Source: Mytilus trossulus (lineage: Eukaryota). Taken from it: a stretch of DNA of 64,000 bases. The stretch covers positions 25,482,001 to 25,546,000 of the forward strand of contig NC_086377.1 of assembly GCF_036588685.1 (NCBI RefSeq), given 5' to 3'. The notes under the pieces were generated by a model that worked only from the letters and a program-made list of their open reading frames with translations, was not told the origin of the DNA and did not search any database. Both the position numbers and the translations under genes were made by a program. This document shows positions 5,760-56,260 of the stretch, one piece after another. The first letter of the stretch is position 1. Every line of letters begins with the position of its first letter.

Positions 5760-5955
5760 TACAGTTGGTCCTAAATTAGATCACCTTTTACAATACACCT
5801 CATCCTAGTAGTCCAAATAATTATGATGTCTGGCAAGGCTATCTTATTTTTTTTCTGGGATGAAGGATGGCATTGCCAGAGTCATAATTAGTTGGACTAG
5901 GATACAGTGTATAATTTGTATTAGCCTTTTTAGGTGACCTAATTTAGGGCCAAAT
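5760..5955. repeat. Imperfect palindromic (foldback) element
   Basis: ggtcctaaattagatcacc..gtccaaataattatgatgtctggcaa is mirrored by ttgccagagtcataattagttggac..ggtgacctaatttagggcc. Confidence 0.6.
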
Positions 5956-6403
5956 GTAGGTTTGCTGAATCTGGTTAGGCCTTAGATAATATATACTCAT
6001 TTTTATAAAGTACAAGCCTCTGATAAAGAAAAAATTTGTGGCAAAAATAAACAAAAGTCTTTACAGGTGAGGTTGAAGGCCACATTATAAATTTATTTCT
6101 GGATAGTTGTTACTTGTCAATTTTATAGAAAAAAATGATCACGACTTCATCAGTAGCTCGACTAGAAAGGTTTTAATAACTTTTAGTTTTTAAAGTTAAA
6201 AAGTTTGAAATGATTAGAAAATGACATAGTTTACGTCGGCTTTGTTTATTACGGTAATACAGGTCAAACTCAGGTCAAGGCCAGATCCATCAAGAACTAA
6301 ATTGGGTCTTGATTAGTCGCTTCTAAAGTATTAAAATATGCATCATTCCAAATAAATCTACTTTGATGGTACTTTCTACAATATCTTGTGTGTGCATCCT
6401 TAC

Positions 6404-6480
6404 CTGTGTAAGTGAAATTCTCGCTTCACGCCCTTTCTGGATGCTACAACCTACAAAAAACAACAAAATGGCAGGTGCGA
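6404..6480 (-). promoter_or_regulatory. Probable non-coding first exon / promoter region of the minus-strand gene
   Basis: Strong donor CAG|GTAAGG at 6404/6403 on the minus strand, and an AAAATGGC (YY1-like) motif near 6465. The 5' end is not defined. Confidence 0.4.
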
Positions 6481-30608: not shown

Positions 30609-33000
30609 CTAATACAAGGATTCATTCGGAATTATTTGCTGTGAATATATTTGGCTGGGTCCTGTTTTTGGGGGATACATATATCTTGTTCCTGTGTTTG
30701 GGGGATACATATATCTTGTTCCTGTGTTTGTTTGCTGGTAATTATATTGTTCTTGACTTTGGTAATTGCCGTGACCAGCTGTGGATGTATACTGTGACGG
30801 TGGTGGTATCAACCTCCCTTGTTCACTCAACCCTCCTAAAATAAATTTGATACACTTTAAAAATAGATTTTAGAAGATGTGGTATGAGTGCCAATGAGAC
30901 AACTCTTCATCCACAATACAATGTAATGATTTTACAGCAGGAGATACGAAGTACAACAACATAAACAACTTTGTATTGTCAGTGAAAAAACCCAAATTAA
31001 GACCTATGAAAATGTGCAAGAATTGCTTGAAATAATATTAAAAGGATTATTATATGTTCAATTTATGTTTAAATATAGTTTATCATTTAATATTCAAAGA
31101 TACTAAATAAATCTACGACTTTTTCATTTTGTTTTAAGGAACAAGTAAAGGCTATCCGTTTGACAATATTTGTATTACCTCCTAATTAAACACTGTTTCA
31201 GAGTTCAACATGATTTCCTTTCTGCATTTGAATGTGACATTACAAGATGAGACTTATTTTGTACTTAGATAAGCTACACAACAATGGCCTTCCTTAACAC
31301 CTAAGACCCCCACCCGTTTTAAGTAGGGTACGTGTTCGGTTTTGTTATGTTGTGTTGCGTATACTGTTGATTGTCTTTTCGTTATTTTGTGTATGTTACC
31401 ACGGGTTTTTATTGTTTGTTTTTTAACGTTTGTGTTTTAATGTCACTGATGAGTATTATGTAGACCAAACGCGCGACTTGAGTATCAAATTATAAGCCTA
31501 GGACCTTGATAACTATTTATTTGTATAGTTTGCTCCTCAATATCTTAAATTACTATAATCGAACATTCAAATCCCAAGTAGACACACTTCCCATTTCAAT
31601 TCTCTATGTTTTTCCTTATTTGAGCTTTATAAGGGCCAGCTGTGGATGAATACTGTGTATGTAAATCATGGCCAAATCAAATGACAAAACACATAAAAAA
31701 CAAATGGACAACAACTGTCATATTCCTGACTTGGTACAGGTATTTTCAAATGTAGAAAATGGTGGATTAAACCTGGTTTATAAAGCTAAACCTCCCACTT
31801 TCTAATGATATCAATCTGCTTCTTTCACTCAACCTTTCTATAAAATCGTTTTTGATTTTGTTTTTTCTGTTATCACTTTGTTACACATTTAAAACCATTA
31901 CTGAAATTATTTACTACACCAGATATGCATCACGACAATCTATATTTCGGCATTGAATTTCGAATATAAAATGTTTGAAAATTTAAAACCTAATACAAAT
32001 GATTGATTGATACTCCACATCAGTACAGAAAAGTCACTATAACAGCAAGAGTTTGTTTTAAAATTGATTTTAGAATTAAATCACTTTCGCAACGGATTGA
32101 AATATGTAAGGGGTGTCAGTTGCAGTATTAGGCGCTGGTATATTTCTCTTTGATAAACGATTGTAGATAACAGAGTATATTAGAATTTGAACAAACAACT
32201 GATCAATTTTGGAGTGAAAATTTCAACTTCAAAAAGTGTTAAATTACCATTTATGCGAAAATCCTGCCGACCTCCTCGTCTATATAGTGCACATGCTGCT
32301 GCAATCAATACACAGAAGATCACCATGCAAACACAAATCCCTACAAAAACTCCTATTTCGTCGCAGCACTGTTTCATATCACCTATTGTAGTTGAACCGC
32401 AACACCCATTCAGACAGAACTCATAGACCGTAAAGTCGTCTGGATGGTAGTTCGGAAAAACTGGATCGTACATAATCTTTTTATAGTAACATGATCCTGT
32501 ATCAACTCCAGCTACAATAAAACAACGTTATTAATTGAAAATCATTGTTAAATACATATAAATGCATCTAAGAATAATATAAACATATGTATTTGTCTCT
32601 TGCAAAGCTTCCTTCTTGATCTTGGTGGATGAGAAAAGGAGGTGCACTTACTATTGTAATAAGCCACTGGGATGTGCAACTATGTTGACTTTAATGATAT
32701 ATAAGAAGGTCGTAAAATTAAGACGAAACATACAACAGATTTGCTGACTAAATCATTTCTCACTACTCAGATGCTGATCTTTTTACACAGGTGAAATAAA
32801 GAACTTGTCGTAAAAGATAAATGAAATTGTCTAAGCTGTGTATCTGTTATTGAAATTGCGAAATAAATAATAATTGCTCCAGATACATTTTGTTGTCAAA
32901 AATACGTGATATTGTATGTTTATGAAGTATTTACAAATTTGAAACCGGTTATCTACCAAATGTCAAACCTACCAAAAATGACATATAATATCAACCTCAT
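30609..33000 (-). CDS. Six-cysteine single-pass membrane protein, paralogue A (Shisa/WBP1-VOPP1/CYYR1-like; 172 aa, long tail)
   Basis: Exons 33000-32973 (MRLILYVIF), 32511-32248 (AGVDTGSCYYK..YEFCLNGCCGSTTIGDMKQCC-TM-RRGGR) and 30835-30609 (GLSEQGRLIPPPSQY..YMYPP..ESLY*). All introns are phase 1, GT-AG. Confidence 0.85.
31633..31845 (-). pseudogene. Decayed duplicate of the 5' part of paralogue A exon 3, split by a repeat insertion
   Basis: ccagctgtggatgaatactgtg and gatatcaatctgcttctttcactcaacctttctataaaat match 30775-30845 and are separated by about 145 bp of a common interspersed repeat. Confidence 0.65.
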
Positions 33001-35630: not shown

Positions 35631-35826
35631 TATTGCATCTTCATTCTTTTTTCTTTTTATTTGATCGTCACTGATGAGTATGATAGACGAGACATGCGTA
35701 TGACGTACAATATTCAAAACTTGGTATCGAAGATGATTTTATTGTTAACAAAGTAGTATTATGTCTGCTGTACGGACTTTATATAGTACTCTTTGGTGAA
35801 CACACAATTCCTTGATCTGTTTCTGT

Positions 35827-38800
35827 TTACTGGTAAATATTCTTTGCTTGTCTCTGAAAGTTTGTATGACTTTCTGTTGACTGATAACCTGGTATCACCA
35901 ATCTGTCTTGTTCAGTCGATCCACCTACAAAACGAAAATGGATAAATATGATATTTTGACGTCAATATACAGGAGAAGACCAACAAAAACAGATACAGCT
36001 AAAATTATTGGACTTACGACCCATGAAAAATAATAACTAAGTTAATGTATCTCAATTCAGAGAGACATCCTGTCATAATTATAGAAGGGAAACAGCTGTA
36101 AATCATTTAACTATCTAGGCAGTTGTATAACATTAGAAGGAGGTGATGAAAGAGATTTCAAGATCAGAATAGGAAAAGCTAAATCCGCATTCATTAGATT
36201 ATGCAACATCTGGACCACAACAGCCTTTTCAAAGAAGCCAAGCTCAGACTCTATATCAGCTGTGTACTTTCCTTACTCCGATATGTCTCAGATTGCTGGA
36301 GAATGACTGCAGCTTCCATAACACATGTCTGGGGAAGATAATGAAAATATTCTCTCTATATATATAACAAAGACCTACATGAGATGACCAAGGACATGGA
36401 GACTTTACTTATACAAAAAAGATTGAGGTGGCTTGGTCATGTTATACGCAAACCATCTGATGACTTGAACAAGGTAGCCCTTAGATGGACATCAGAGGAA
36501 AAAAGAAAAAGAGGCCGACCTAAAACAACATGGAGACGCACCATAGAAAATGAGCTAAAGGAAAGAGGATATGCCTGGGTCACAGTGGAAAGAAAAGCAA
36601 ACAACCGAGAAGAATGGAGGAAACTTGTCAATGCATTTTATGTCATAAGGCATATTAAGGACTAAATAAGTAAGTAAGTATTCTGATGTCAAACACGCGA
36701 GGCAATGAATGTGGTTTTAAAATTTGATAGATGCTTTTGTGCTTTTTTTCAAAATATTTTTTTGTTTTGAGATTGAGACACAGTGATGACTGCTGTACCA
36801 ATGTTTTGAATATTTTACCTATTATTTATGTTTTGTACACGCATCGTTGTAAATTTTATGGATTTTTATGTGACTGTCATACAAGTGACAGGTTAAGCGC
36901 CATAAAACCACGCTCAATCCACCATTTTCTACATTACCTGTACCAAGTCAGTTGTTGTCCATTCGTTCGATGTTTTTTATAATTTGATTTTGCCATTTGA
37001 TTGAGGACTTTCCGTTTCCATTTCTTCCTCGGAGTAGATTATTTTTGTTCCATTAATTTAAAGTTTTTCAGAGTGATTTTATGTGTAGTTTTGTTCTTGT
37101 GGTGTGTAGTAAGTTTGAGAAAACTATATTATTAGTTAGAAAATGATATAGATCAACTTACGAACAAAACAAATCCTTTAAAACAATCAGGTGTATTTAT
37201 TGACAGTTTTGTATTACACATTCTCCCATTATCATTTAAAAAATTAAATATTAAACAACTTATAGTCCCTGGTTATATAAGAGCGAAAACAATGAAGTCA
37301 GACTGACATAATGCATGATTATGACGTGCGTCAAGTTATAACATACTAAAAATCCGATAATCTTCATAGAAATTGTCAAATCAAATTGCGGTCATTAGAC
37401 TGGACAAAGGCCTCTTTTTACAACTTCGAAAACTTGTATACAACGTATTCGTTGAATAAGTTCTGAGTGTTTACAAATGTGTTAGACGGACGGAAAACAC
37501 TTTAAATATGTTCCTCCAACAAAGTGCGCAAACTGACAATTTTTGATTACATACAGTTCCTGTCTCCAAGTTTTGCATACAAGGAAAATGAAATCCCCCC
37601 GTTCTACTCTCTATTTTAAAAAAAAAATATTTGAGATCCTCCAGTGTTTTTGGATTGATACATGCTTTTCAAAATTTTGAAGGGGTAACTTCATCGGGTG
37701 ATGAAAAAGTAACAAGAACAAAATAAAAAGAAGGAACGTTATGTTATTGTATGAAAAGGCCCAGGATCTGCAGATCTGCATTTTAATGAGGTTGTGAAAA
37801 GGACAGTAACACAGTCAAACGAATACCATTACTTATACCGTGTAAAACTCTACGTCTTCGTCGTCTATACATGTATACAGCTGTGATCACCAACGCCACG
37901 AAGACCACTACAGCAATCAGAATCCCAATAGTAGCCCCTGTCGAGTTACAGCAATGTTTTAATCCACCTTGTTTATCGGCCCCACAGCAGCCAGCAAGGC
38001 AGTACTCATAGGTAGAGGTATAGTAAGTTGGATCCGTATGTTTGTAGTAGCAAGATCCTGCATACACGTTAGCTTCAGAGGAAGAAAATAGATAACTACG
38101 TTAAATTTGCGAAAATAATCAAAATGCATTTCCTGGCAGTAATCTAATAATTCTGTCTGTGAAATTGAATTTCATAATTCATGTTATTGTATTAGACAAG
38201 GGTTTAGGACCCCTTGGTATAGCATATTTTGAATACTAGTATGACATGTATGATGTGGCTAATCTGTTTATATATAAATAAGAAAATGTGGTCGGATTAC
38301 AATTAAAAGCAGTACATGACGATACATTTGTAATTCCTGTAATTAGTTAATACTTCAGTTTTATCATGTACATCTTTTGTATAGTCATTTTATAAAATTT
38401 ACTGTTTGCAAAAGTATAAATTATTCTAAATAATAGGGATATTCTGGTAACTAACAAAAAACTCTTGCCGTTTTTGGCACAACTTTTTTTATCTTTTGGT
38501 CCTCGATGCTGTTCAACTTTGTACTTGTTTCGGCTTTCAAACTTTTCTATCTGGGCGTCACTAGTAGGTCTTGTGTGGACAAAATGCACTTCTGGCGTAT
38601 TAAAATTTTGAACTTGTTGCCTTTTGTTGGCTGTTGCTCATGTGATTCTTTGTCAATTGTGTTCTCCAATTTATTTATATTGGTGTCCTGTGGTGTTGTG
38701 TTGTCATTTTGATGTTTTATTTCACATGGCCATAAAAATGCGAGTTTTGGCATGCCACAAAACCAGGTTCAACCCACCATTTTGTCCTTAAAAAATGCCC

Positions 38801-41057: not shown

Positions 41058-44000
41058 TTTAAAACAAACGAACAATTGACCCGCATGTACTAACATCGGT
41101 GACACTTTTTATCTGTTTCTATTGTACATTGTTAACTGTAAACTTCGGAGAAAATGGTGGACAATGAATAGTCATTTAAATTAGGGATACACATGTTTTA
41201 TTAAACTCCCATCTGATTTCTTGTAGACTAAGACTAATCGACATGTAATTTAAAAAAAATATAGAATTGTGAAATAAATTCATTTCTGCCAATAAAGCTT
41301 CGCAATGTCTTTAAAAGGATTTCATTTTATAGCACGCCCAAAGAAAAACCATTGCCAAACATCAAAAAGTTCCGTTCTCAAGTTAGTGAAACAGCCAGAC
41401 ACACAGACAAACACAAGTATAATATAAATAAGATCTTTAGGGTTAACAGTTTGTCATACACTGGACCTTTATAGATCTTTTAATTGAGCATGGGAAAAGT
41501 ACTGAATATATTCCAGACAAAGAGGTAGGGTCATTTTCTGCTGACTTTTTTCCATTTGATAAAATAGGTTAATCATGTTTTTAAAAAGCCTGATTGATGC
41601 TTATTATAGTTATGAATATACGTCACATCATCTATTTTCATACCTTGAACAGGTATTTCTACAATAAACAAGGCCAAGACGATTTATTTTTTGTTTTTAT
41701 CAATACTGATTTTGTTTGTAAATGTTTAGAAGTGTCCAAATATAATTCATTGAGTTATCAACTAGAAGATGTTCAAAATTAGTTATGTTTAAAAAACCCG
41801 TTGCCTCAGTTAGCGTGTTAATATCGGTAAGTGATTGTAGTGTACATGCATTATATAGCTTTATTCAACATAAAACTAACAGAAAAAAACAATCCAAAAA
41901 TAATTAAAACAAACACATTTAATTTATGGACGGTGGTAACAATGTCAGTACTAGTACACAGTTTGTTGTTTTGAAATTGTTCTGCTCTGGCATTTCTTCG
42001 TTATGTGTATATTACACACAAAACGTTAGGGCTTCATTGTGATACATGATCAATTATCGTGTTATTGGTTAATATGTACAAGCACCTACTTCAGTTTGAC
42101 GGCAATTGTTCCTTGCATATATATAATAAAGGTGAACACAGTAATTGAAAGTAGGTGAAGAGTATGGATAGTTATAGGAACGCACACAATAAGCAACACA
42201 TTACTTTTTTCTTTAATGAAATGATTTATAGTCATAATGACTCTTTGAATTAAACAAACATCCCAAAATATGATAGGAATATTAAATTTTAATATTTCAA
42301 CACAAAAAATGCAAAAAATCTTTGTGAGATTTGAACACGTTCTTTAAAAAGCAATCCAATATTTAATGTTAGTAATATGCGCTACCGATGGAGCCACGGC
42401 GACTCTTAAGGACGAATTTGTTATTAAGCAGCTATATAGTTGCACTTGAGTGATGTTCCACTATTTGTTAAAAAAAGTTGTTTAAGGTGTTGAGGACAGT
42501 CTAAGCCAATTTCATTTTTTAGGATAAAAAAAGTTGTACAAAAACACGGTATATTCCGCATATTTGACTTTCGTCTTTTTTGGGGGTTAATTAAAAAAAA
42601 ATCAGACATCATTATATATAAAAATCCAGATATTGATCAAAAATCATTTTTATTTCTTGTTTTTATCGTAAATTTTATTCTTCCAGCACTTTTTGAAATT
42701 GGCCCTTCTATGAAGAAATTGACCTTTCCTCTTTTACATTTTCATGATACTGCACGATTTGAATATTGTGAAAGAGTTTGCTGTAATTCTTTAGAATTTG
42801 TACGGATCCACATTAGATTGACAACACTGGTTGAATATAACTCATCACGATATTTCTAGAAACAATATCTCACTGTACAAACAAATGTAGTAAACATTTA
42901 AGAAAGATGTTCAGTTTAGGTGACCAGGTTTAAGATGGTACATCATAAAATGATGAAATATCATTATATGATATCCAAAGGATAGAAGTTCAGAGTTGTG
43001 TTTTGTTCCTCTTTCGCGAAAGATGTAAACATGTTAAAGGTTACTTAGACCATTAGTTCGTCGTGTTGAAAAACGCTACTTTTTATATTTAATAAGAAAC
43101 TAAGAAAATGATACAAAGTTAATCTGAATGTTGATTTTTCTTTACTTTAAGTTTATTATATAACACAAGTACATCAAAGTTAAAAGAAATATACATAGTG
43201 GAGATATTTGTTAGCAGTAAATCATGGACACAAAATTACTTCCCCTACTCTGGTTCACAGAGTTATACTCAATACATAGTTTGACCGTCTATTATTCAGC
43301 ACAAAAACTGCACAAATTTATAAGGTAACTAGTTCTTATCATTTTTGTTACGGATATTACTCCAACTGTGTATTGTAGTTGATGAATGTGAACAAAAATG
43401 AAAGATGGCAAATTATAATGAATCCAACATTTCTGTAATGCTTCACTAATCAATAGAGCGCTTGTTCAATGTTCGATAATTCACAATAATAATTAGATTT
43501 ATCTTTTAATTGTTATTATGTATTCAAAGTCAAGATGATTAGGTTAGAAATAAGGACGTCCGGTTTGCAATATATATTTTGTACTTTATATAAAATGTTA
43601 GTTCCATTAGTTCATACATAATACACCAATTAACACTAAACATGTATCCTTATTGATTAATGATCTTTTGTCAGTCAATGTAAGAGATAGAAAAATCAAG
43701 TGAATAAACCCATCATAGAAACCAGGACTAACTTAAGTATATACGCCAGACGCGCGTTTCGTCTAAAAAAGACTCACCGGTGACACTCGAATCCAAAAAA
43801 GTTTAAAATGCCAAATAAAGTACGAAGTTGAAGAGCATTGAGGACCAAAATTCCTAAAAGTTTGGCAACATACAGCTCGGTTATCTTTGCCTGGGGACGA
43901 AAAGCCTAAGTATTTAAAATAATTCAAAATTTTGTAAACAGTTAATTTATAAATATAAATACTGAACTTCAGTAGTTCAAGTAAATGTCTTCAATAAAGT

Positions 44001-44185: not shown

Positions 44186-47100
44186 TCAGTTCTGGTACGC
44201 AGGCGCATTAGGGGTGATTTGATGTGAGTACATGTTTCTGCTTCCTGTTTGTGGCGGATATATATAACCGGTTGTTGTGTTTGTTTGCTGGTAAGTATAC
44301 CGTCCTTGACTTTCATAATGATTATGGCCAGTGGCTGAAGGATATTGCGTGGCTGTTGTGGCTGTTGTAGTTGGTGGTATGAGTCTACCTCGTTCATTTG
44401 ATCCTCCTATAACAATGTATTAAATCAGATTCACTTTATTTAGTGGTTTGTCTCACATTTAATGATATTTATATATTGCGAAAAGATCACTCAAATACCA
44501 AACACATAATTGATAAGTATTTTCTACCCAAATTGATGGATTTTGACATTTGAAATGCCGTTACTTGTTTTTGCTGAACTTTTAAAGAGGTTCGGACTTC
44601 TTTACAAAAAAATGTTTGACTTTAATTAATTCACCAAAGCAAAGATCTGCGTTATAAATGTGATATGAGAATGCAAAACAACGACATCCGGAATCAACTT
44701 AAGAAGATTTTAATCGCGAAGAAACAAGGTTTCCTTAAAGAACTGGCCTAAACAAATATATGTTTGAGCTAGATCTACAATTGGTCATTGCTGGCAACCT
44801 CAAAGCAAGGTTGTGAAGATCAACTATTGCACCTTATTCCCAAATTGTGTTAAAAACGTATTCCATGGGTTAAATGTGGGATATTCCAAATACAACTAAA
44901 CCCAGGACAAGTGATTTGCAATTATGAAAGAATGAAAAAAATATTGCCCAAAGGTAAACAAACAAATGGAACTGACAATTATGAAACTTTCAAAAAGTCT
45001 ATGTACACTTACTGATTACGAATGAATCATTACGATGTCTTCTTCTACACAGGGCACAAATTATAAGTAGAAATGCGAGAAATCCTGCTGCACCAAGAAA
45101 TATTCCTATAATGGCTCCTGCATCCTTACAGCAATGTTTTTTACCATCTATTTCGGTTGAACCACAACAACCAGTAAGGCAGAACTCGTAGATCGAGTAA
45201 TCGTTATAGGAAAATGGTGACCATTGTTTATAATAGCACGATCCTGCATTACTTCCAGCTGCAGTATGATAAAAACTATTGGTTAGAAAAAATGCATTGT
45301 ACAGTTTATATGGAGAAAAAGAAACCATTTGAAAGTTTATTATTAAAATTCATAATTTTAAGACATATACATTGCCTTCCTTAGGGATAATTTCTCTACT
45401 CTCAGAATAATATGAAATACAACTGTTCTTTAATGTTCAACGATAAAATATAAACACATTCAGTTTAGTTATGAGCTGTTCGTAACTGTTATAGGATAAA
45501 CGTATTGTAAAAATAAAATAACAAAACTATCAAACTCCGAGGAATATTCATAATCAAATGGCAAAATCAAAACTCAAACACATCAAACGACTGTCATATT
45601 CCTGACTAGGCTTCTGTGCTAGGGTAGATTGTAAAAAATTATTATAAGTGACGTATTTTAGACTGGAACTTTGTGACGAAAAAGAAGGAATAATTGTCCG
45701 TAAACTGCATAAAAAAGGTAAATGATAACATCAAGTATCTATCACTGGTGTTAAACTGGTAACCATAACTGGAATTACGACGATCCCATAATGGAGACGG
45801 CAGAAATAGGTAAAATCTTTACAATAATTTTTCTCAAATGCAGCATGTTTTGTCAATAATTACTCAGCTGCAAGGTTTTTCTTATACATCATATTTCAAT
45901 CTTAACGTAGTACTGTTATTGTCTAAGTGCTTAGACAATTGCCGTTGGAAAAATCGGGATGATTATCGTAACTCTATGGCATTGTCCTTGTTTGATAATC
46001 GCAATTTCCTAATTGGATAATAATAACCGAAAAAGGATAAATGTGTCTTCCAGCATTTCAATGGTATTTTGTGTGTAAAAACGAAAATTTCTAGTTAAAC
46101 GATGACATTAAAAGGGCAATAGCTGTTTACTGATGTTAATCAATTTCTCATATTTGATTTATAACAATGAAAACTTTATCCAAACTATTGGATGTCTTAA
46201 ACAAGCAATTAGACGCCATTGCATTAATTATCGAGTTGACCATATAAGCGATGTGAACCTGAATATAGATATAAATAGATTAAGCAAACTCGTGCTGTTG
46301 GATTATTCTAGGTCTATTTTATTTCATATTAAAGATAAAAAACAAATGTTTACCATCGTTTGTACCTATATAAGAACGATTTTTTTGGATCGAATCAGTC
46401 AATCAAATGATTTATCTTTGTTGCACATTCAATGTTGACATTCTTGCTCTTTCAACAATTCTACACATACAATTCACGTGTTATCCATCTAAGGCTAAGG
46501 GGTTATATTTTGTTTTTTTACTCTTTTACGCAAAATAAAATAAATGAAGTAACTTACAGGTTAATATCTAGGACAAATTTACTTACATATCTCGATTTAT
46601 AACTGACAACAGTGTGCATAACTTTTTAATATATATACATGTTCCTGTTAAAGATATGGAAAATGAAGCAGCTACCGAGTCAGTTATTATGGTAAGTAGA
46701 TATTTTAATTTCATTCAAAGTTTCAATGTTGCGTGCGCGTTCAATGTTATTTTTTGATAAAAAAAAAAGGAGGGTATTAAAAATCCATTGCTCTAAATAA
46801 AAGTCCCGTATACCACAAATTTGATATGCCATGCTAGTATGTTTTCCTCTAATATCATGTTGAGACTAAAATTCTGCGTGTAATGAACAAAAGTTTCCAC
46901 CAATAACTTTTTGACTACATTATCGGATTTAACAGTTGATACTTGTATCGGTGTATATGAGTGTTCATATTGCCCTTTTCCTTATTTTTCAATAAAAATG
47001 CATATCTTTGCTCATTGTTGAAGGCCTATAGTTGTAAATGTATGTGTCATGTTGGTCTCGTGTTTCTGTGTATTACTGTTCTAATTTATTCTGTTTAGTA

Positions 47101-49217: not shown

Positions 49218-52200
49218 TTATGTTTCATGTGTTATTCCGTGACTTTGATACTGCTTTTGACCATCTGTTGACAGATTCGACGGTGAACCTGGTTTCACTA
49301 ATCTGTCTCGTTCAGACGACACATCTGAAATAATTATATGATTTAACATGAAATACATAAACCTTTATTGTTTTTTCAGTTTATATGTGTGTTTGTGTGT
49401 ATTGTTTTATTCCCATTTGTTAGCTTTATAAAGATACAATATAACAATTCATGAAAAAGAAACACAAAAAAAATGTAAACAACACAGGTAAATGTCGTCT
49501 GAACGTTTTTGTAAAACTACAATTTGATTATTTCAGGCTGAAAAAAAAAACGACATTGAGAGGCCTTTTTATAAGCATACATTTACTTGATCTAAACACG
49601 GAAAGTTATAAGTAGAGCATTGTAGTTTCAGACAATAAATCAATCGCGTATCTTAACAAACAAGTAATTTTTGGGGCTCATTATAGCTAGATGTTCAGTG
49701 TGAGCCAAAGCTCCGTGTTCTAGACCTTACTTAATTGCTAACTTTTACATCATGTACATATTGTGACAAGGATGGAAAGTTGTCTTTTTGGTACTGATAC
49801 CACATACTCATATATCTATAAACAAGCCTGAAATTCATTGGTTGTCGTTTGTTAATGTGTTACATATTTGTTTTTCGTTCATTTTATTTGTAGATAAATG
49901 AGGCCGTTAGTTTTCTCGTTTGAATTGTTTTACATTGTCTTATCGGGGCCTTTCATAGCTGACTATGTGGTATTGGCTTTGCTCATTGTTAAAGGCCGTA
50001 CGGTGACCTATAATTCTTAATGTCTGTGCCATTTTTGTCTTTTGTGGATAGTTGTCTCATTTGCAATCATACTACATCTTCTTCTTTAAAATTTATAAGA
50101 ATAGATTCCACTAAAAAATATACCTTTATGTGTGTAATAATGCAATACTTTGAAAATGTTTTGTAACGTTACAAAATCAAATTCACATACTAGTATATCT
50201 ATGAACAAGATAAATTCTTCAAAATATGAAACAAAAGTGAATCTTGCTCAAAAAGGAAAACAACATGTTATGTGTGTCCGAATCAATTTTTTGGATTAAC
50301 CTCAATTAGGAACGCTGACAGCTGAAAAATTTAAAGCATAGAATATAAAGGGACCAAATTCATACCATTTACAAGTAAAAGTCTACGTCGTTTTTGTCTA
50401 TACACGAAACCAGCAGTGACTACCAGTCCAACGAAGAGAACCAAAGCAATCAGAATTCCAATTGTAGCACCAGTAGAGTCACAGCACTGATTAATACCAC
50501 CACGTTTATAGGCGCCACAACATCCAGCAAGACAGTACTCATAATGCGTCGTTGTATTTGTATAGAATTCAAACGGTTTTGGAGTGAACACGTTCATATG
50601 TTCATAGTAGCATGATCCTGCATATACTTCAGCTTCAAAGAAAAAAAGCGTCTTTTGTAACACCCAATCAATGACAATAAACTACAAATAGGCGAATTCC
50701 ACTTATAAATAATCTTGCAAATCTATTTGAAGTACTGTTTACGGCACTCAAAGTTATAAAATAAAAGCGGAAATAAAAAATGTATATGCAAAAAGATATG
50801 TTATGTAAAGACACTAAACAGGAGTTAGTACTTGAATAACACGTTCAATAACTTTCGCTTTGGGAGATGTGAAAATTTGTTTACGATAAAAAAAAAATCA
50901 TATTTCCCTGTGCCGATGCCCTCATGTAGTATACATTTTCTTAGCTGAACACCATGGGAAGAATAAACTAAATGTATAATACTTTTATATCTATATGAAA
51001 TTCCATTTTGTCTTCTTGAACATGTTACCTTTGATTTTAACTAACTAAGTGACATTTCTATCCTAAAAATAAAAATAGGGAAAACGCAGAACTGTATAGG
51101 ATCTGTCCTTGTCTTGTAAAAACATGATATCAAGCTGATAATTTAAAACTTGCAATTTGGCTAATAAAAAGTTCGAATTTCATATATATTTGATGTCTGA
51201 TTATAGTTATCAGAAGTACCAGGATTATAATTTTATACGCCAGACGCGCGTTTCGTCTACATAAGACTCATCAGTGACGCTCAGATCAAAATAATTAAAA
51301 AGCCAAACAAAGACAAAGTTGAAGAGCATTGAGGACCCAAAATTCCAAAAAGTTGTGCCAAATACGGCTAAGGTAATCTACTCCTGGGGTAAGAAAATCC
51401 TTAGTTTTTCGAATAATTCAAAGTTTTGTAAACAGAAAATTTATAAAAATGACCATATAATTGATATTCATGTCAACACCGAAGTGCTGACTACTGGGCT
51501 GGTGATACCCTCGGGGACGAAACGTCCACCAGCAGTGGCATCGATCTAGTGGTGTAAATAGTTATCAGAAGTACCAGGATTATAATTTTATACGCCAGAC
51601 GCGCGTTTCGTCTACATAAGACTCATCAGTGACGCTCAGATCAAAATAGTTAAAAAGCCAAACAAAGACAAAGTTGAAGAGCATTGAGGACCCAAAATTC
51701 CAAAAAGTTGTGCCAAATACGGCTAAGGTAATCTACTCCTGGGGTAAGAAAATCCTTAGTTTTTCGAATAATTCAAAGTTTTGTAAACAGAAAATTTATA
51801 AAAATGACCATATAATTGATATTCATGTCAACACCGAAGTGCTGACTACTGGGCTGGTGATACCCTCTTTTAATTAAAATGGCAGAAAACTTATAAAAGT
51901 AAAAAGCAAACGTATGTTCATACACGGACGGACTAAACTTTCCAATAATTTTTATCAAAATTAGATTCATTGGCATTATACAGTATATCTACATTACATG
52001 TTCTATATGCCAAATGTTGAGAAAGCTAGGAAAACCCGCAAATACCTAGTTTTGGATAAGCTTTTGATGAAAGAGAGGTAACCTATTTTTACCTAATTTA
52101 ATATCGATAAAGCTGTCAGATTTATCTTTCCAGTTGTATATCAATATTTCTGTAAATGTATTTGAAAGAATAGAACATTTCTTTATAAGTAATGATTTTA

Positions 52201-52587
52201 AAGCACAGTTTGAAAACACTACATCATTCATTAAAAAGTTCTAGTCCAAATTATTTATATATGATTTGTATTCAATTACTATACATGAATAAAATATTTG
52301 TGATAAAAATGCAAATTTCACTAGAACAGTATTTAAGGGTGTAGACCTTTGTCCTGGGAGATAACTCTTTGAATCAGTTATGCGTTTTTAAAAGTCAAGT
52401 ATCATCAATGTATTTTAAGCATTTACCTGAAACAGATTAGATATAGTCTATGTAACCTAGAAGCTTAGAATATATTTATGAAAAGGGTTAACACAAATGT
52501 ACTGATGATTTTAAGAGTTACTTCCCTTAACCAAGGTCTACCTCCTTAAAACTTACTGATTAACGACAACAATATTCCTTTAATCAT
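49218..52587 (-). CDS. Six-cysteine single-pass membrane protein, paralogue D (134 aa, short tail)
   Basis: Exons 52587-52557 (MIKGILLSLI), 50632-50366 (TEVYAGSCYYE..YEYCLAGCCGAYKRGGINQCC-TM-RQKRRR) and 49324-49218 (DVSSERDRLVKPG..THET*). Phase-1 GT-AG introns. Confidence 0.85.
51236..51280 (-). ncRNA. Type I hammerhead ribozyme (copy 1)
   Basis: GCGUCA-CUGAUGA-GUCU(uaugu)AGAC-GAAAC(gcgc)GUC^-UGGCGU. The catalytic core is intact, with stem I GCGUCA/UGGCGU, a 4-bp stem II and a minimal palindromic stem III. Predicted cleavage between 51243 and 51242. Confidence 0.88.
51591..51635 (-). ncRNA. Type I hammerhead ribozyme (copy 2)
   Basis: Identical to copy 1. Predicted cleavage between 51598 and 51597. 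Confidence 0.88.
52337..52545. mobile_element. TTAA-targeting MITE (Kolobok-like) next to the exon-1 donor of paralogue D
   Basis: ttaa|GGGTGTAGACCTT...AAGGTCTACCTCC|ttaa, with the imperfect TIR extending inward. Confidence 0.7.
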
Positions 52588-55455
52588 CTTTCTCGAGTTT
52601 TCTATTTAGACTGGTTACTTTATTAAACGTTCTCGTTGCCCTCACGAGTAACAATCAAGGCGGAAACTTTTTCGTGTTTCCTGCCATCTAAATAGTATAA
52701 TAGAATAATATTATATAATGGGAAACGATGTTATTGCAATGAATAGTTTGAATTTAAAAACATGTGTGTCCTGAACCGAATTTAATACATAATATATTTT
52801 GGTAAAGGGCAATAGGTGAAAGTTTGTTTAATTATTATTTGATCAATTTGATCAGAAATACATTGTAAATTGTGAGCCTACACAATCTTTTAGCAATTAA
52901 CATTGAATATATCTACATATAAGTTTTATTTTGGTTGATATGCAATACGCATGATTCGGATTGCGATATGTCCGTCAAGTAGTATGGTTTCAGATGACAT
53001 GACCTTACGTTATTTGTGCGTTTGTTGGGCATACAGAGGCGCGAAACATGTCAACTCATCAATTGAAAACAAACCGACAACGCGATGGCTTGTTTGATTT
53101 CTTGTTTGAAACACGCGTCTGGCGTATTAAATTAGAATCCTGGTACTATTGATAACTATAATGTCGGTCATTTAGTTTACTCATTGTATAATTAGGGAAT
53201 ATATTTTTTTAATAAACATTTATTCAGATCAAACTGCAGATTCTTACTTAATATGCAACCATACCTTTTACTTTTGATGAATCAACTTTCATAATATGCA
53301 ACCATGCCTTTTATTTTTGATTAATCAACTTTCATATCACTTGATATCTTTCATATCTTTGAAAACTTAAAAGTAATGATATGTTGTTCAAATGGTCTCC
53401 TTGTTTAAATGTTTAATGCATTTTTCATTAAGATGACGTAGTATTTTATTGGAAAGCAATTCCCAAAATCGATTCAAAATACAACTAAACGTGTCACATA
53501 CGATGGATGATCTGCTTACTCTTTCGGAGTACCACTCACTTTTGAATCGGTGGCGTTTTAATTTTGCTTTTAAATCATTTTTTTGAATACTCCTTCTGCA
53601 ACTTCTGTCTAACAAATGCAACTGAAACTCTCTTCCGTCCAGCTTTGCCTCAATCTTCTCATTATTTAATGCACACATTAACCTGTTTTTGTTAACATAT
53701 TATGATAGGCAAACATTGATAAATCTATAAGCCAATATCTATTATGTGACGATCTGGCTCAAAGTAACTATAGGCGAACCTTCGTAATAACTGTTTAATA
53801 GTATGACTTTGTACAGTTAAAACACAAAAACCTTAAAAAAATGGATTTTAATAGTTTTAATATCTATTGCAGCCTTACCGTCGATGTTCATAGCTGCATC
53901 ACGAGTTGCGTAACATATTCGCTTTATATCATCGTAATCTTTGCAAAATCTTTGTATTAAGGCATTGCATCTTTGTCCAGATTCAGCGACACATCTTTCA
54001 TCAGAAAATTACAGTTCATTTACACATTAATTGTGTATATGATGTGTTTAAAGTTAACAATAAATTAGGTATGGTTTTTTATACTTTGAAGTTTTCATTG
54101 TACAAAAATATGTTATTAAAAAACTATAATTGCATTAATATGTACGACTATCGTTAAACTCAGCTTATTTTAAATATTAGCATTTGAAACAATTGCTGAT
54201 AATAAGCAGTCGTATTGAATTAATATCTTCCTAAACATGAACTACATATATATATATATATATATCATGCATATGTCACTGGACATTCAGCAGTCGACCA
54301 TAAAATTCACCACCCAAATAACATGATTATAATGCATATAAATAATTTAGTATAGAATCTTGCACTTTTTTATGTAATTGATTTATTTGGAATTTCGTAT
54401 ACCTTTTCAATATACTGGATCTTTTCCTGCTACAATCCTGTGTGTTAAAGTAATTATAACTTAATAGTTACCAAGGCAGAAGTGTATCTGAAACAAATTC
54501 ATCATACCATTTGTCATATTGGCCAACAAATTCACTATTCGTTTAACCCATGTATGTCTTATAAACGATATAAGTTATAAGTTATAAGTTGCATTTGTTA
54601 GACAGAAGTTGCAAAAGGAGTATTCAAAAAAATATGGAGAAGACGTTCTAAGTTGCAAAACTTGTGTCTAATCCTATTGTCAATGTTTTTGGACAATAAA
54701 ATATGTTTAAACTAAACTTATAAACGATTAAACTCATAGAACAAATAAACTATATAGAAATAGGGAGATGTGGAGTGAGTGCGGACGAGACAACTCTCCA
54801 TCCAAATAACAATTTAAAAAAAAGTAAACCATTATAGATCAATGTACGGCCGTCAACACGGAGCCTTGGCTCACACCGTAAAACAAGCTATAACGGGCCC
54901 CAAAACTACTAGTGTTAAACCATTCAAACGGGAAAATCATTTCTATATATAAATAAACAACACGATAAACACGTTTAAATTACATAAACAAACAACAACA
55001 ACTGTACATCAGATTCCTGACTTGGGAGAGGTGCAAACATTTGCAGCGGGATTTAACGTTTTAATGGATCCAAACCTTCTCCCTTTTTCGGAAACAATAG
55101 CATAACATCACAACATAGAAAAACACACGATAACATATCAATTGGCAGGCTTAACTTAATAAAAAAAAACGTAAATTAATACACTATGAATGCAGAAATT
55201 TGATCTGCGATATCTGAATACAAATGCACAGTTAATAAATTATTAGGGACAAACATTCAAGGCCAAAAGCAAACAAACAAGTCCAAAAAAGCCATGGCAA
55301 GACACCACTGCGAAATATTTAACCCTTCGAAAATATTCACTTAAGAAAAAAAAACGGTTTCAATAATACAGGTAAATCTTGAAGTTTTTACAAACTTCAG
55401 TAGTAAGAAGAAGTTAAAATTAGAAGATATTCTAAATAATCAAAGCTGGTATATA

Positions 55456-56260
55456 TGTTAGACTCAGATCGACGTGCAGTCTCTAATTGACGTCCGTTCC
55501 TCTAATCGACGTCCAAATCTGATGTCACATTCTCAAATCGACGTCCAATATTTTGATCCTCTAATCGACGTCGAATTCGACGTCATGTATTGTCAAAACG
55601 AAGTCTGATAGATTGTAATCTTCTCTTATCGATGTTCAATAACTAATGAAATAACAAATTACTGCACTTACATTTATAAATGTACATTTGTAGGAGGTTG
55701 ATTGATTTTGAACTTTTCAAATACGAAATAAACGATGAGTTTTGGTCTGATTTGCAGGGTTCTTCAAGCAATTTAATTTTTAAACTATTATTTTAATACT
55801 TTCGATAACGATTTTCTTCAACCAGAACGGTTCTGTAAAATTCAGTAATAAATTTAGGTTTTGTTTTTTTTTTAAATATTTCATTTGTCGCATCTAATTA
55901 ATTATGTTGATATATTGACATAGAACTGTCTGTAAATCTCTCTCGGACAATCCAAGTATCAGTTCTGTTATAACCTTTTTCGGTTCCCATTTGCAGTTTT
56001 TTTCGTTTGTTTTGGACATTTACGGCATTTCGGCCCAAAATATTTTCGGATTTGGATCTTTGCATATGCCTATAAAACGGACGTCGATTCGAGCAGCTAA
56101 AAATTGGACGTCGATTAGAGAGGCCAAATATTAGACGTCGATTAGAGGGACATAACATTGGTCGTCGATGTAGAATTTTTTTTTATTGTGACGTAAAATT
56201 TGGACGTCGATTCGAGGAACGGACGTCGATAAGAGACCGGCCGTCGATCTGAGTCCTACA
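55456..56260. mobile_element. Non-autonomous DNA transposon with TGT...ACA termini and 4-bp TSD (Ginger-like), nested in a larger repeat (~54755-56430)
   Basis: tata|TGTTAGACTCAGATCGACG...CGTCGATCTGAGTCCTACA|tata, with arrays of AATCGACGTCC subterminal repeats in mirror orientation. Confidence 0.7.

What the first reader, a model, noticed from the sequence alone, without database searches (positions are those of the whole stretch)
51203..51867. Intact double-hammerhead retrozyme in sense orientation inside intron 1 of paralogue D
Seen: two identical hammerhead cores with intact catalytic residues lie 355 nt apart on the minus strand, the strand from which gene D is transcribed. Known: minimal type I hammerheads with a palindromic stem III occur in Penelope-like elements and in non-LTR retrozymes that yield small circular RNAs, reported in mussels among other animals, and such motifs cleave better as dimers. 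Inference: the D pre-mRNA could self-cleave at 51598/51597 and 51243/51242, releasing a 355-nt monomer able to circularise. This could sever intron 1 and reduce gene D expression. The near-identity of the units suggests a recent insertion.
Basis: partly seen in the sequence, partly recalled or inferred. Interest (0 to 1): 0.8.

Follow-up and report, generated by a model that had tools for sequence, protein, structure and literature searches.

The report
Known mussel hammerhead retrozyme in intron
This is a young, intact copy of a mobile repeat already described in mussels, carrying two self-cleaving hammerhead ribozymes and sitting in the first intron of a small membrane-protein gene; nothing seen here shows that it affects that gene.

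Summary
Two identical type I hammerheads lie 355 nt apart on the minus strand (Rfam RF00163, 33.0 bits against a cut-off of 34). They sit in a 1.87-unit tandem at 51203-51867.

The element is a copy of an abundant 355-nt family in a 1.3-Gb Mytilus genome (at least 206 matches at 97-100% identity). It fits the non-LTR retrozymes published for Mytilus galloprovincialis (PMC7229834). This scan has already noted retrozymes elsewhere in the same genome.

The gene context is also right. The array lies in sense orientation inside a canonical GT-AG intron 1 (52556..50633) of paralogue D.

The functional inference is not supported:
- Three RNA runs give zero depth on D exon 2 and on the array's flanks.
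- The abundant retrozyme RNA carries the family's letters, not this copy's private ones.

Added here:
- Arrays of the family end at a fixed point, about 40 nt past the cleavage site, in 14 of 18. Their 5' starts vary, as in Penelope-like elements.
- Two hammerheads are predicted to fold as a double hammerhead.

The element is ordinary and of a known kind.

The parts
51203..51867 (-). Retrozyme array, 665 nt = 1.87 units. In hammerhead sense: monomer positions 86-355, then 1-355, then 1-40 (position 1 = first base after the cleavage site).
   Evidence: TRF period 355, 1.9 copies, 99%; blastn of the monomer on L001; units differ at 1 of 310
51592..51635 (-). Hammerhead ribozyme 1 (type I); predicted cleavage between 51598 and 51597
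   Evidence: RF00163 33.0 bits, E 5.5e-6, model 1-45; sequence read
51237..51280 (-). Hammerhead ribozyme 2 (type I), identical to the first; predicted cleavage between 51243 and 51242
   Evidence: RF00163 33.0 bits; sequence read
51243..51597 (-). The one full 355-nt monomer between the two cleavage sites (the RNA that double cleavage would release)
   Evidence: 38.6% G+C
51203..51242 (-). 40-nt 3' tail after the last hammerhead; the point where most arrays of this family end
   Evidence: 3' end at monomer position 35-48 in 14 of 18 arrays
50633..52556 (-). Intron 1 of paralogue D (1,924 nt, GT-AG, phase 1) that holds the array; 689 nt of intron lie upstream of the array and 570 nt downstream
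   Evidence: donor GTAAGT, acceptor; the reading across it matches the N-terminus of P0001
52557..52587 (-). Coding part of exon 1 of paralogue D (start codon plus short signal-peptide start)
   Evidence: 10 of 12 N-terminal residues of P0001 found here by a frame scan; sequence
50366..50632 (-). Exon 2 of paralogue D (Cys-rich ectodomain and transmembrane segment)
   Evidence: tblastn and ORF; 94% identity to P0001

Best explanation
The stretch is one recently inserted, 5'-truncated copy (1.87 units) of the abundant 355-nt non-LTR retrozyme family of Mytilus mussels. This family is a non-coding, non-autonomous retroelement with one type I hammerhead per unit. Inferred from the family's anatomy: an uncleaved multimeric or circular retrozyme RNA is reverse-transcribed at a nicked target, starting at a fixed point about 40 nt downstream of the hammerhead cleavage site. 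Copying runs round the unit one or more times and stops at a variable place. This gives partial tandems with a constant 3' tail and ragged 5' ends, the layout of Penelope-like element insertions. This copy happened to land, in sense orientation, in intron 1 of a small Cys-rich single-pass membrane-protein gene (paralogue D). Its two hammerheads are intact and are predicted to work as a double hammerhead through their palindromic stem III. A transcript running through both could therefore release a 355-nt monomer that a tRNA ligase could circularise. Whether this copy is ever transcribed, and whether that matters for gene D, is not shown. The most likely state is a nearly neutral intronic passenger.
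For: - Hammerheads: RF00163, 33.0 bits twice, the only Rfam matches at E <= 1 in 64 kb.
- Family: at least 206 matches in the own genome, full units 97-100% identical, arrays from about 1 to about 20 units, from 1,649 first-look candidates. RF00163 scores over its cut-off at 42 of 74 scored places in this genome and at 0 of 14 control genomes.
- Genus: the best protein hits of the host gene are named Mytilus.
- Published kind: M. galloprovincialis has about 5,000 type I hammerheads in 350-390-bp repeats. They are abundant as circRNAs. A dimeric 353-nt construct self-cleaves and is circularised by RtcB (PMC7229834, passages).
- Low G+C, 38.6%. No Pfam match for the mechanical 76-aa ORF.
- Ends: 3' end at monomer position 35-48 in 14 of 18 arrays, while the 15 visible 5' starts range from 54 to 332.
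- Penelope-like elements are described with frequent 5' truncation, partial tandems and a 30-40-bp tail (PMC8557442, passages).
- Double hammerhead: two 44-nt motifs cofold at -29.5 kcal/mol with an 8-bp intermolecular stem III. In the minimum-energy fold of the 665-nt array the two palindromes pair with each other.
- Family RNA is abundant: mean depth up to 454 and 741 per 200-nt bin, mostly with the first mate on +.
- Intron context.
Against: - The hammerheads fall 1 bit below Rfam's gathering score.
- Thermodynamic folding gives no support on its own. The monomer's minimum free energy is -74.9 kcal/mol, z = +0.34 against shuffles. A single hammerhead in the canonical fold scores -3.4 against -9.2 for an alternative fold.
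- No target-site duplication is evident at this copy (my reading).
- Circularity cannot be judged on a tandem reference.
- No read ends pile up at the cleavage sites.
- I could not compare the sequence with the published mussel clones, because the supplements are closed. Identity with the published family therefore rests on genus, unit size, ribozyme type and copy number.
- The autonomous partner is not identified. None of 30 sampled GIY-YIG loci has the retrozyme's 3' terminus. Only a 29-nt motif is shared with one element family.
- The 18 arrays are a small, non-random sample: they are the best-scoring matches.
Confidence: 0.88

Rival explanations
1. Gene D's pre-mRNA is transcribed through the array, the two hammerheads cut it inside intron 1, a 355-nt circle is released from the host transcript, and D expression falls measurably.
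For: The array is in sense orientation in intron 1, with two intact hammerheads. The dimer is predicted to take the active double-hammerhead fold. A cloned mussel repeat self-cleaves during transcription at about 0.1 per min (PMC7229834, passage). An intronic self-cleaving ribozyme that modulates its host gene has been reported for Cpeb3 (PMC10919898, search listing only). Xenopus retrozymes are mildly depleted from introns (preprint 10.64898/2026.07.22.740005, section 13).
Against: Three raw RNA runs (6-18% of each read) give depth 0 on D exon 2 and 0-0.04 on both flanks of the array. At this copy's private positions the reads show the family letter: 1250 of 1254 at 51667, 1046 of 1049 at 51545 and 1432 of 1438 at 51568. 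None of the 13 listed begin/end piles lies at a cleavage site (5 more were not shown). The published cleavage rate is slow. From memory, not checked here: hammerheads placed in introns need not block splicing unless they cleave fast (Dye et al. 2006; Fong et al. 2009). About 43% of Xenopus retrozymes are intronic, so such insertions are commonly tolerated.
Confidence: 0.08
2. It is a fragment of an autonomous Penelope-like element (a solo pseudo-LTR) rather than a separate non-autonomous retrozyme.
For: It has the layout of a partial tandem with a 5' truncation and a roughly 40-nt tail. A 29-nt motif (26-27 of 29 identical) equal to the retrozyme's 3' terminal module occurs in internal repeats of about 305 nt upstream of a 965-aa ORF with an N-terminal GIY-YIG domain.
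Against: Similarity to that element is limited to 29 nt (local score 23, against shuffle mean 13.4 and maximum 20.5). That element's own insertions end at a different sequence. None of 8 ORFs of 144 aa or more, from six of the ten array regions held (four of which have no such ORF), has a Penelope-like domain. The family forms arrays of about 20 units without any ORF. No long ORF adjoins the window copy.
Confidence: 0.03
3. It is plain satellite DNA that spreads by DNA-level mechanisms, and the hammerhead motifs have no present role.
For: Long head-to-tail arrays exist. Folding energy of the monomer is no better than that of shuffles.
Against: There are many dispersed short copies, on different chromosomes and with different flanks. 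They share one 3' end and have ragged 5' ends, which is the signature of reverse transcription rather than unequal exchange. The family's RNA is abundant and strand-biased. Hammerhead cores are intact in young copies and mutated in the four old relics of this window.
Confidence: 0.02

Closest known systems
Metazoan non-LTR retrozymes of Mytilus galloprovincialis (Cervera & de la Pena 2020, PMC7229834; passages read)
   Same: Same genus by the names of the protein hits. Type I hammerhead. Unit of 355 nt (350-390 bp published, and a 353-nt construct). Tandem copies from dimers to multimers. G+C below 45%. No LTR and no coding capacity seen. Abundant RNA of the family.
   Different: Nothing structural. 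I could not align it with the published clones because the supplements are closed. Two details are not in the passages I read: the fixed 3' end about 40 nt past the cleavage site, and this copy's place in a gene's intron.
Penelope-like elements (PLEs), including the N-terminal-endonuclease Naiad clade abundant in mussels (Craig et al. 2021, PMC8557442; passages read)
   Same: Insertion architecture: frequent 5' truncation, partial tandems and a short tail at one end. One GIY-YIG element family of this genome shares a 29-nt motif with the retrozyme's 3' module.
   Different: The retrozyme has no ORF. It has a canonical hammerhead, whereas Naiads are described as lacking canonical hammerheads. 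The sampled element's own 3' terminus differs from the retrozyme's. Pfam found only GIY-YIG in its ORF, with no reverse-transcriptase match at E <= 0.01.
Vertebrate non-LTR retrozymes / newt satellite 2 type hammerheads (preprint 10.64898/2026.07.22.740005, abstract and sections 13-14 read; Rfam RF00163)
   Same: Type I hammerhead with the same stem II and the same palindromic stem III as the RF00163 consensus. Tandem units of a few hundred bases. Many copies lie in introns (about 43% in Xenopus).
   Different: Different unit sequence and host phylum. The link to PLE pseudo-LTRs was shown there for Xenopus, and here only as a 29-nt match.
Plant LTR retrozymes
   Same: Non-autonomous retroelements whose hammerheads release a monomer that is circularised.
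   Different: Plants: type III hammerheads inside LTRs, with a primer-binding site, a polypurine tract and 4-bp target duplications (PMC7229834 passage). None of these is present here.

Membership tests
Hammerhead ribozyme type I (Rfam RF00163) | Conserved catalytic core (CUGAnGA, GAAA, cleavage triplet NUH) in type I topology | tested here: met
   Full-length alignment to model positions 1-45 with all core letters, twice; sequence read
Hammerhead ribozyme type I (Rfam RF00163) | Score at or above Rfam's gathering cut-off (34 bits) | tested here: not met
   33.0 bits, one bit short. E is 2.4e-4 for the whole window. Other copies in the genome reach 35-41 bits.
Hammerhead ribozyme type I (Rfam RF00163) | Three helices able to form | tested here: met
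   Stem I has 6 bp and stem II 3-4 bp. Stem III has only 2 bp in a single motif (canonical fold -3.4 kcal/mol) but 8 bp between two motifs (cofold -29.5 kcal/mol).
Hammerhead ribozyme type I (Rfam RF00163) | Self-cleavage | not testable with these tools
   No pile of read ends listed at the sites. A related cloned mussel repeat cleaves in vitro (PMC7229834 passage).
Metazoan non-LTR retrozyme | Short tandem units (about 150-450 bp), each with one type I hammerhead, from dimers to multimers | tested here: met
   355 nt x 1.87 here; family arrays of about 1.1 to about 20 units
Metazoan non-LTR retrozyme | Low G+C (<45-50%), no LTR/PBS/PPT, no coding capacity | tested here: met
   38.6% G+C. The only ORFs are mechanical ones of 67-76 aa, and the 76-aa one has no Pfam match. 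PBS and PPT were not searched for specifically.
Metazoan non-LTR retrozyme | High copy number, dispersed in the genome | tested here: met
   At least 206 matches on many contigs from 1,649 candidates
Metazoan non-LTR retrozyme | Expressed as small circular RNA | tested here: inconclusive
   Family RNA is abundant, but circles and multimers look alike on a tandem reference. This copy's private letters are nearly absent from the reads.
Metazoan non-LTR retrozyme | Sequence identity with the published Mytilus clones | not tested
Penelope-like element (pseudo-LTR fragment) | Unit belongs to an element with an ORF encoding a reverse transcriptase and a GIY-YIG nuclease | tested here: not met
   None of 8 ORFs flanking family arrays has such domains. 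None of 30 GIY-YIG loci contains the unit as its terminus; 4 merely have retrozyme copies nearby.

The most novel reading that the evidence does not exclude
This sense-oriented, intact dimer borrows the promoter of gene D. In tissues where D is on, the intron would serve as a host-driven source of 355-nt circles marked by this copy's private letters. At the same time it would act as a natural ribozyme knock-down allele of D, visible as allele-specific expression if the insertion is polymorphic. The retrozyme's fixed 3' module (29 nt shared with an element that has an N-terminal GIY-YIG domain) would mean that hammerhead retrozymes in mussels are copied by a Naiad-type element that itself lacks a hammerhead.
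Probability: 0.06. Interest if true: 0.5.

Novelty: already known. Interest (0 to 1): 0.15.

Why it matters
It matters little as a discovery. Hammerhead retrozymes with units of this size and in this copy range are published for Mytilus, and this scan has met them repeatedly in the same genome. Three things have some use:
- It is a clean, datable example (3 private substitutions, plus a fourth letter that only 13 of 60 other units share; 1 difference between units) of a sense intronic insertion. It could serve to test whether intronic hammerheads cost the host gene anything.
- The family's ends give a simple constraint on the transposition template. Because the fixed 3' end lies about 40 nt past the cleavage site, the cleaved linear monomer cannot be the direct template.
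- The paralogue cluster has collected five insertions of this family, four of them decayed.

Tried and rejected
- Rfam at gathering threshold over the window found nothing, because both hammerheads score 33.0 against 34. The E-value mode found them.
- Thermodynamic folding of the monomer and of one hammerhead gave no signal above shuffles. Only the two-motif cofold was informative.
- Upstream DNA of the four paralogues does not align, so exon 1 could not be found that way. It was found through the N-terminus of P0001.
- Pfam gives no family for the host protein; all matches are below cut-off.
- I looked for an empty site. Both intron flanks are single-copy in the assembly apart from short unrelated repeats, so no second haplotype or paralogous empty site was seen.
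- The look-up of encoding contigs, meant to fetch the orthologous M. galloprovincialis intron, was closed. Whether the insertion is polymorphic or shared between species stays open.
- The search for the autonomous partner gave these results. 149 GIY-YIG matches were found and 30 loci fetched. None has the retrozyme's 3' terminus. Four have unrelated retrozyme copies nearby (L046, L058, L060, L068). Three (L051, L052, L056) share a 29-nt motif only. Their own insertion ends differ.
- The search listing for ribozymes in introns was not followed by reading. What I say about exon tethering is recalled.
- The joined (spliced) model of gene D was not searched. Exons were handled apart and the splice was only read by eye.
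- The large representative protein search, structure prediction and the atlas were not used, because no claim here rests on them.
Full report
**Observation**

Read on the minus strand, 51203-51867 holds two identical 44-nt type I hammerhead motifs, 355 nt apart.

Rfam gives RF00163 at 51592-51635(-) and 51237-51280(-). Both score 33.0 bits over the full model, with E 5.5e-6 in a 1.5-kb scan and 2.4e-4 over the whole window. There they are the only two matches of any of 4,227 families at E <= 1. They miss the gathering score of 34 bits by one bit, so the default scan is blank.

Tandem Repeats Finder reports period 355, 1.9 copies and 99% matches. The two units differ at 1 of 310 shared positions. 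The core pattern never occurred in 100 shuffles.

**What it is**

The 355-nt monomer has at least 206 matches in the window's own genome (1.30 Gb, 541 contigs; the window is C5:25482001-25546000). Full units are 97-100% identical, lie on many chromosomes, and form arrays from about one unit to about twenty. These come from 1,649 first-look candidates, so the counts are lower bounds.

RF00163 scores over its cut-off at 42 of 74 scored places in this genome, and rings in 0 of 14 control genomes. The host gene's best protein hits are named Mytilus galloprovincialis (94% identity over exon 2) and M. trossulus, so the genome is a Mytilus mussel.

Cervera & de la Pena 2020 (PMC7229834; passages read) describe just this for M. 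galloprovincialis:
- about 5,000 type I hammerheads in repeats of 350-390 bp;
- G+C under 45%, with no LTR features;
- circular RNAs at up to about 1% of total RNA;
- co-transcriptional self-cleavage of a cloned repeat at about 0.1 per min;
- a dimeric 353-nt construct whose monomer is circularised by RtcB (about 30%).

The present unit has 38.6% G+C and no ORF beyond mechanical ones. I could not align it with the published clones, because they are in supplements that are closed. Membership therefore rests on genus, size, ribozyme type, arrangement and copy number. Earlier notes of this scan report retrozyme arrays of 351 and 561 bp elsewhere in this same genome. Those are unchecked AI notes, but they agree.

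**Gene context**

Four paralogous exons encoding a Cys-rich ectodomain plus a transmembrane segment lie on the minus strand, at about 32.2-32.5, 37.8-38.1, 45.0-45.3 and 50.3-50.7 kb. For the last one (D):
- The N-terminal residues of the annotated M. galloprovincialis protein P0001 map to 52587-52557 (10 of 12 identical in a frame scan).
- The ATG is at 52587-52585, and the exon ends in phase 1 before a GTAAGT donor at 52556.
- The acceptor AG is at 50634-50633. Read across this intron, the product begins exactly as P0001 does.
- Exon 3 matches at about 49337-49221.

Intron 1 is thus 52556..50633 (1,924 nt). The array lies inside it, in sense orientation, 689 nt from the donor and 570 nt from the acceptor. 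I read the splice by eye only. The joined model was not searched. Pfam names no family for the protein.

**Expression**

Only one reads call was available. It covered window 50200-56199 with three raw RNA-seq runs of 2026 (X21, X22, X24; 6-18% of each read) and one set of contigs (X1, only guessed to be RNA).

- D exon 2 (bins 50200-50799) has depth 0 in all three RNA runs. The flanks of the array have 0-0.04.
- X1 has two low-depth contigs over exon 2. One runs 94 nt past the acceptor into the intron, so it is DNA or unspliced RNA.
- The array itself is covered heavily, at 454/80 (X21), 741/71 (X22) and 49/64 (X24) for first mate on +/- in the bin 51400-51599. If X21 and X22 are standard stranded libraries, most RNA is therefore of the minus, hammerhead polarity. 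This is an inference, because the library chemistry was not verified.
- 1,897 of 2,051 (X21) and 2,432 of 2,658 (X22) laid reads are only 95-99% alike.
- At positions where this copy differs from every one of 60-72 other genomic units that I hold, the reads carry the family's letter: 1,250 of 1,254 at 51667 and 1,046 of 1,049 at 51545. At 51568, where 13 of 60 other units share this copy's letter, 1,432 of 1,438 reads carry the majority letter.
- None of the 13 listed begin/end piles lies at a cleavage site (5 more were not shown). Circles and multimers cannot be told apart on a tandem reference.

So the family is strongly expressed, but there is no sign that this copy or gene D is expressed. 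The caveat is that the runs share only a species label with the best holders. Those animals may lack this allele, and the tissues are unknown.

**How the hammerheads would work**

A single motif is weak. The canonical fold scores -3.4 kcal/mol against -9.2 for an alternative fold, and the fold tool gives z = +0.80. Two motifs cofold at -29.5 kcal/mol into the classical double hammerhead, with stems I and II in each motif and an 8-bp intermolecular stem III. In the minimum-energy fold of the whole 665-nt array the two palindromes pair with each other.

It also fits a stable circular monomer. The monomer as a whole folds no better than shuffles (z = +0.34).

**How it got there**

Among the 30 loci fetched with the monomer I could see 18 distinct arrays. 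This is a small sample and not random, because these are the best-scoring matches.
- The 3' end lies at monomer position 35-48 in 14 of 18, mostly 40-43, as in the window copy at 40. The others end at 54, 72, 105 and 130.
- The 15 visible 5' starts scatter from 54 to 332. The window copy starts at 86.
- Many copies are 1.1-1.9 units long.
- By eye, several junctions show a few bases of microhomology between the target and the element's last bases. I see no clear target duplication at the window copy.

A fixed 3' end that is not the ribozyme cut site means that the cleaved linear monomer cannot be the direct template. An uncleaved multimer or a circle is required, with copying that starts at one place and stops at a variable one.

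This is the architecture described for Penelope-like elements: 5' truncation, partial tandems and a 30-40-bp tail (PMC8557442, passages). Penelope-like elements were proposed as the partner of retrozymes in PMC7229834. A 2026 preprint (10.64898/2026.07.22.740005; abstract and sections 13-14) relates Xenopus retrozymes to pseudo-LTRs of these elements.

I tried to find the partner here:
- The genome has at least 149 GIY-YIG matches, many in open frames of about 900-1,056 aa.
- None of 30 fetched loci carries the retrozyme's terminus.
- Three loci of one family (GIY-YIG at residues 179-271 of a 965-aa frame; Pfam finds no RT match at E <= 0.01) share a 29-nt motif, 26-27 of 29 identical. The motif equals the retrozyme's positions 13-41 and lies in internal repeats of about 305 nt upstream of the ORF.
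- The similarity goes no further: local score 23, against shuffle mean 13.4 and maximum 20.5.
- That element's own insertions end elsewhere.

This is a lead, not an identification.

**Age and neighbours**

The copy differs from the family's majority letters at 4 of the 9 positions checked, those where the RNA reads differ from it. Three of these letters are private, and one of them occurs in both units. It is 97-99% identical to other units. It is therefore young.

The same paralogue cluster holds four older relics of the family, with mutated hammerhead cores, on both strands.

No second copy of the intron's flanks exists in the assembly. The tool that could have fetched the orthologous M. galloprovincialis intron was closed. 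Whether the insertion is polymorphic is unknown.

**Verdict**

The observation and the structural part of the interpretation are right: retrozyme, sense orientation, intron 1, recent. The functional inference (severed intron, lowered D expression, circles made from the host transcript) is possible in principle, but nothing seen here supports it.

Intronic retrozymes are common. About 43% of Xenopus copies are intronic, only mildly depleted. The published mussel ribozyme is slow.

The element is a member of a published family in the same genus, and the scan has met that family before on other DNA of this genome. It is already known and of low interest.

Noticed in passing
window 43721-43956 (-), 38344-38607 (+), 35651-35726 (+), 31446-31477 (+): Four older relics of the same retrozyme family lie inside the paralogue cluster, on both strands, at 74-82% identity to the intact copy over the longer matches. 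All have mutated hammerhead cores, for example changes in CUGAUGA, GAAA or the cleavage triplet.
   Followed up: partly
L001-L030 (own genome), array ends: Arrays of the 355-nt family end at monomer position 35-48 in 14 of 18 cases, while their 5' starts range from 54 to 332. Several junctions show a few bases of target microhomology (by eye). The cleaved linear monomer therefore cannot be the direct template of insertion.
   Followed up: partly
L073:1550-1578 and 6150-6178; L074:1245-1273, 1550-1578, 6142-6170, 6447-6475; L075:1550-1578, 5882-5910: An element with a 965-aa frame and an N-terminal GIY-YIG domain is inserted as a partial tandem (unit about 4.6 kb). Its internal repeats of about 305 nt upstream of the ORF carry a 29-nt motif that is 26-27 of 29 identical to the retrozyme's 3' terminal module. 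Its own 3' insertion end is different.
   Followed up: partly
window 54600-55199 and 52507-52550: Two other repeats in the stretch upstream of gene D (54600-55199) and in its intron 1 (52507-52550) attract many RNA reads and high contig depth, with fixed differences from the window. They are expressed repeats of other families and were not identified. The stretch 54743-55084 is also shared with the regions of paralogues A and C.
   Followed up: no
window 52331-52400 (-): A piece of about 68 nt in intron 1 of gene D has dozens of copies at 90-97% identity across the genome. It is probably the end of another short mobile element.
   Followed up: no
window 32246-32521, 37801-38076, 45032-45286, 50334-50663 (all -): There are four tandem paralogues of a small Cys-rich single-pass membrane protein with no Pfam family. 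Relatives are annotated only as hypothetical proteins in M. galloprovincialis and M. trossulus.
   Followed up: partly
array bins 51400-51799: In the two runs that look stranded, 9-17% of reads on the retrozyme have the opposite orientation. This is more than I would expect from leakage alone (recalled, not measured here). They could be antisense transcripts or read-through of inverted copies.
   Followed up: no
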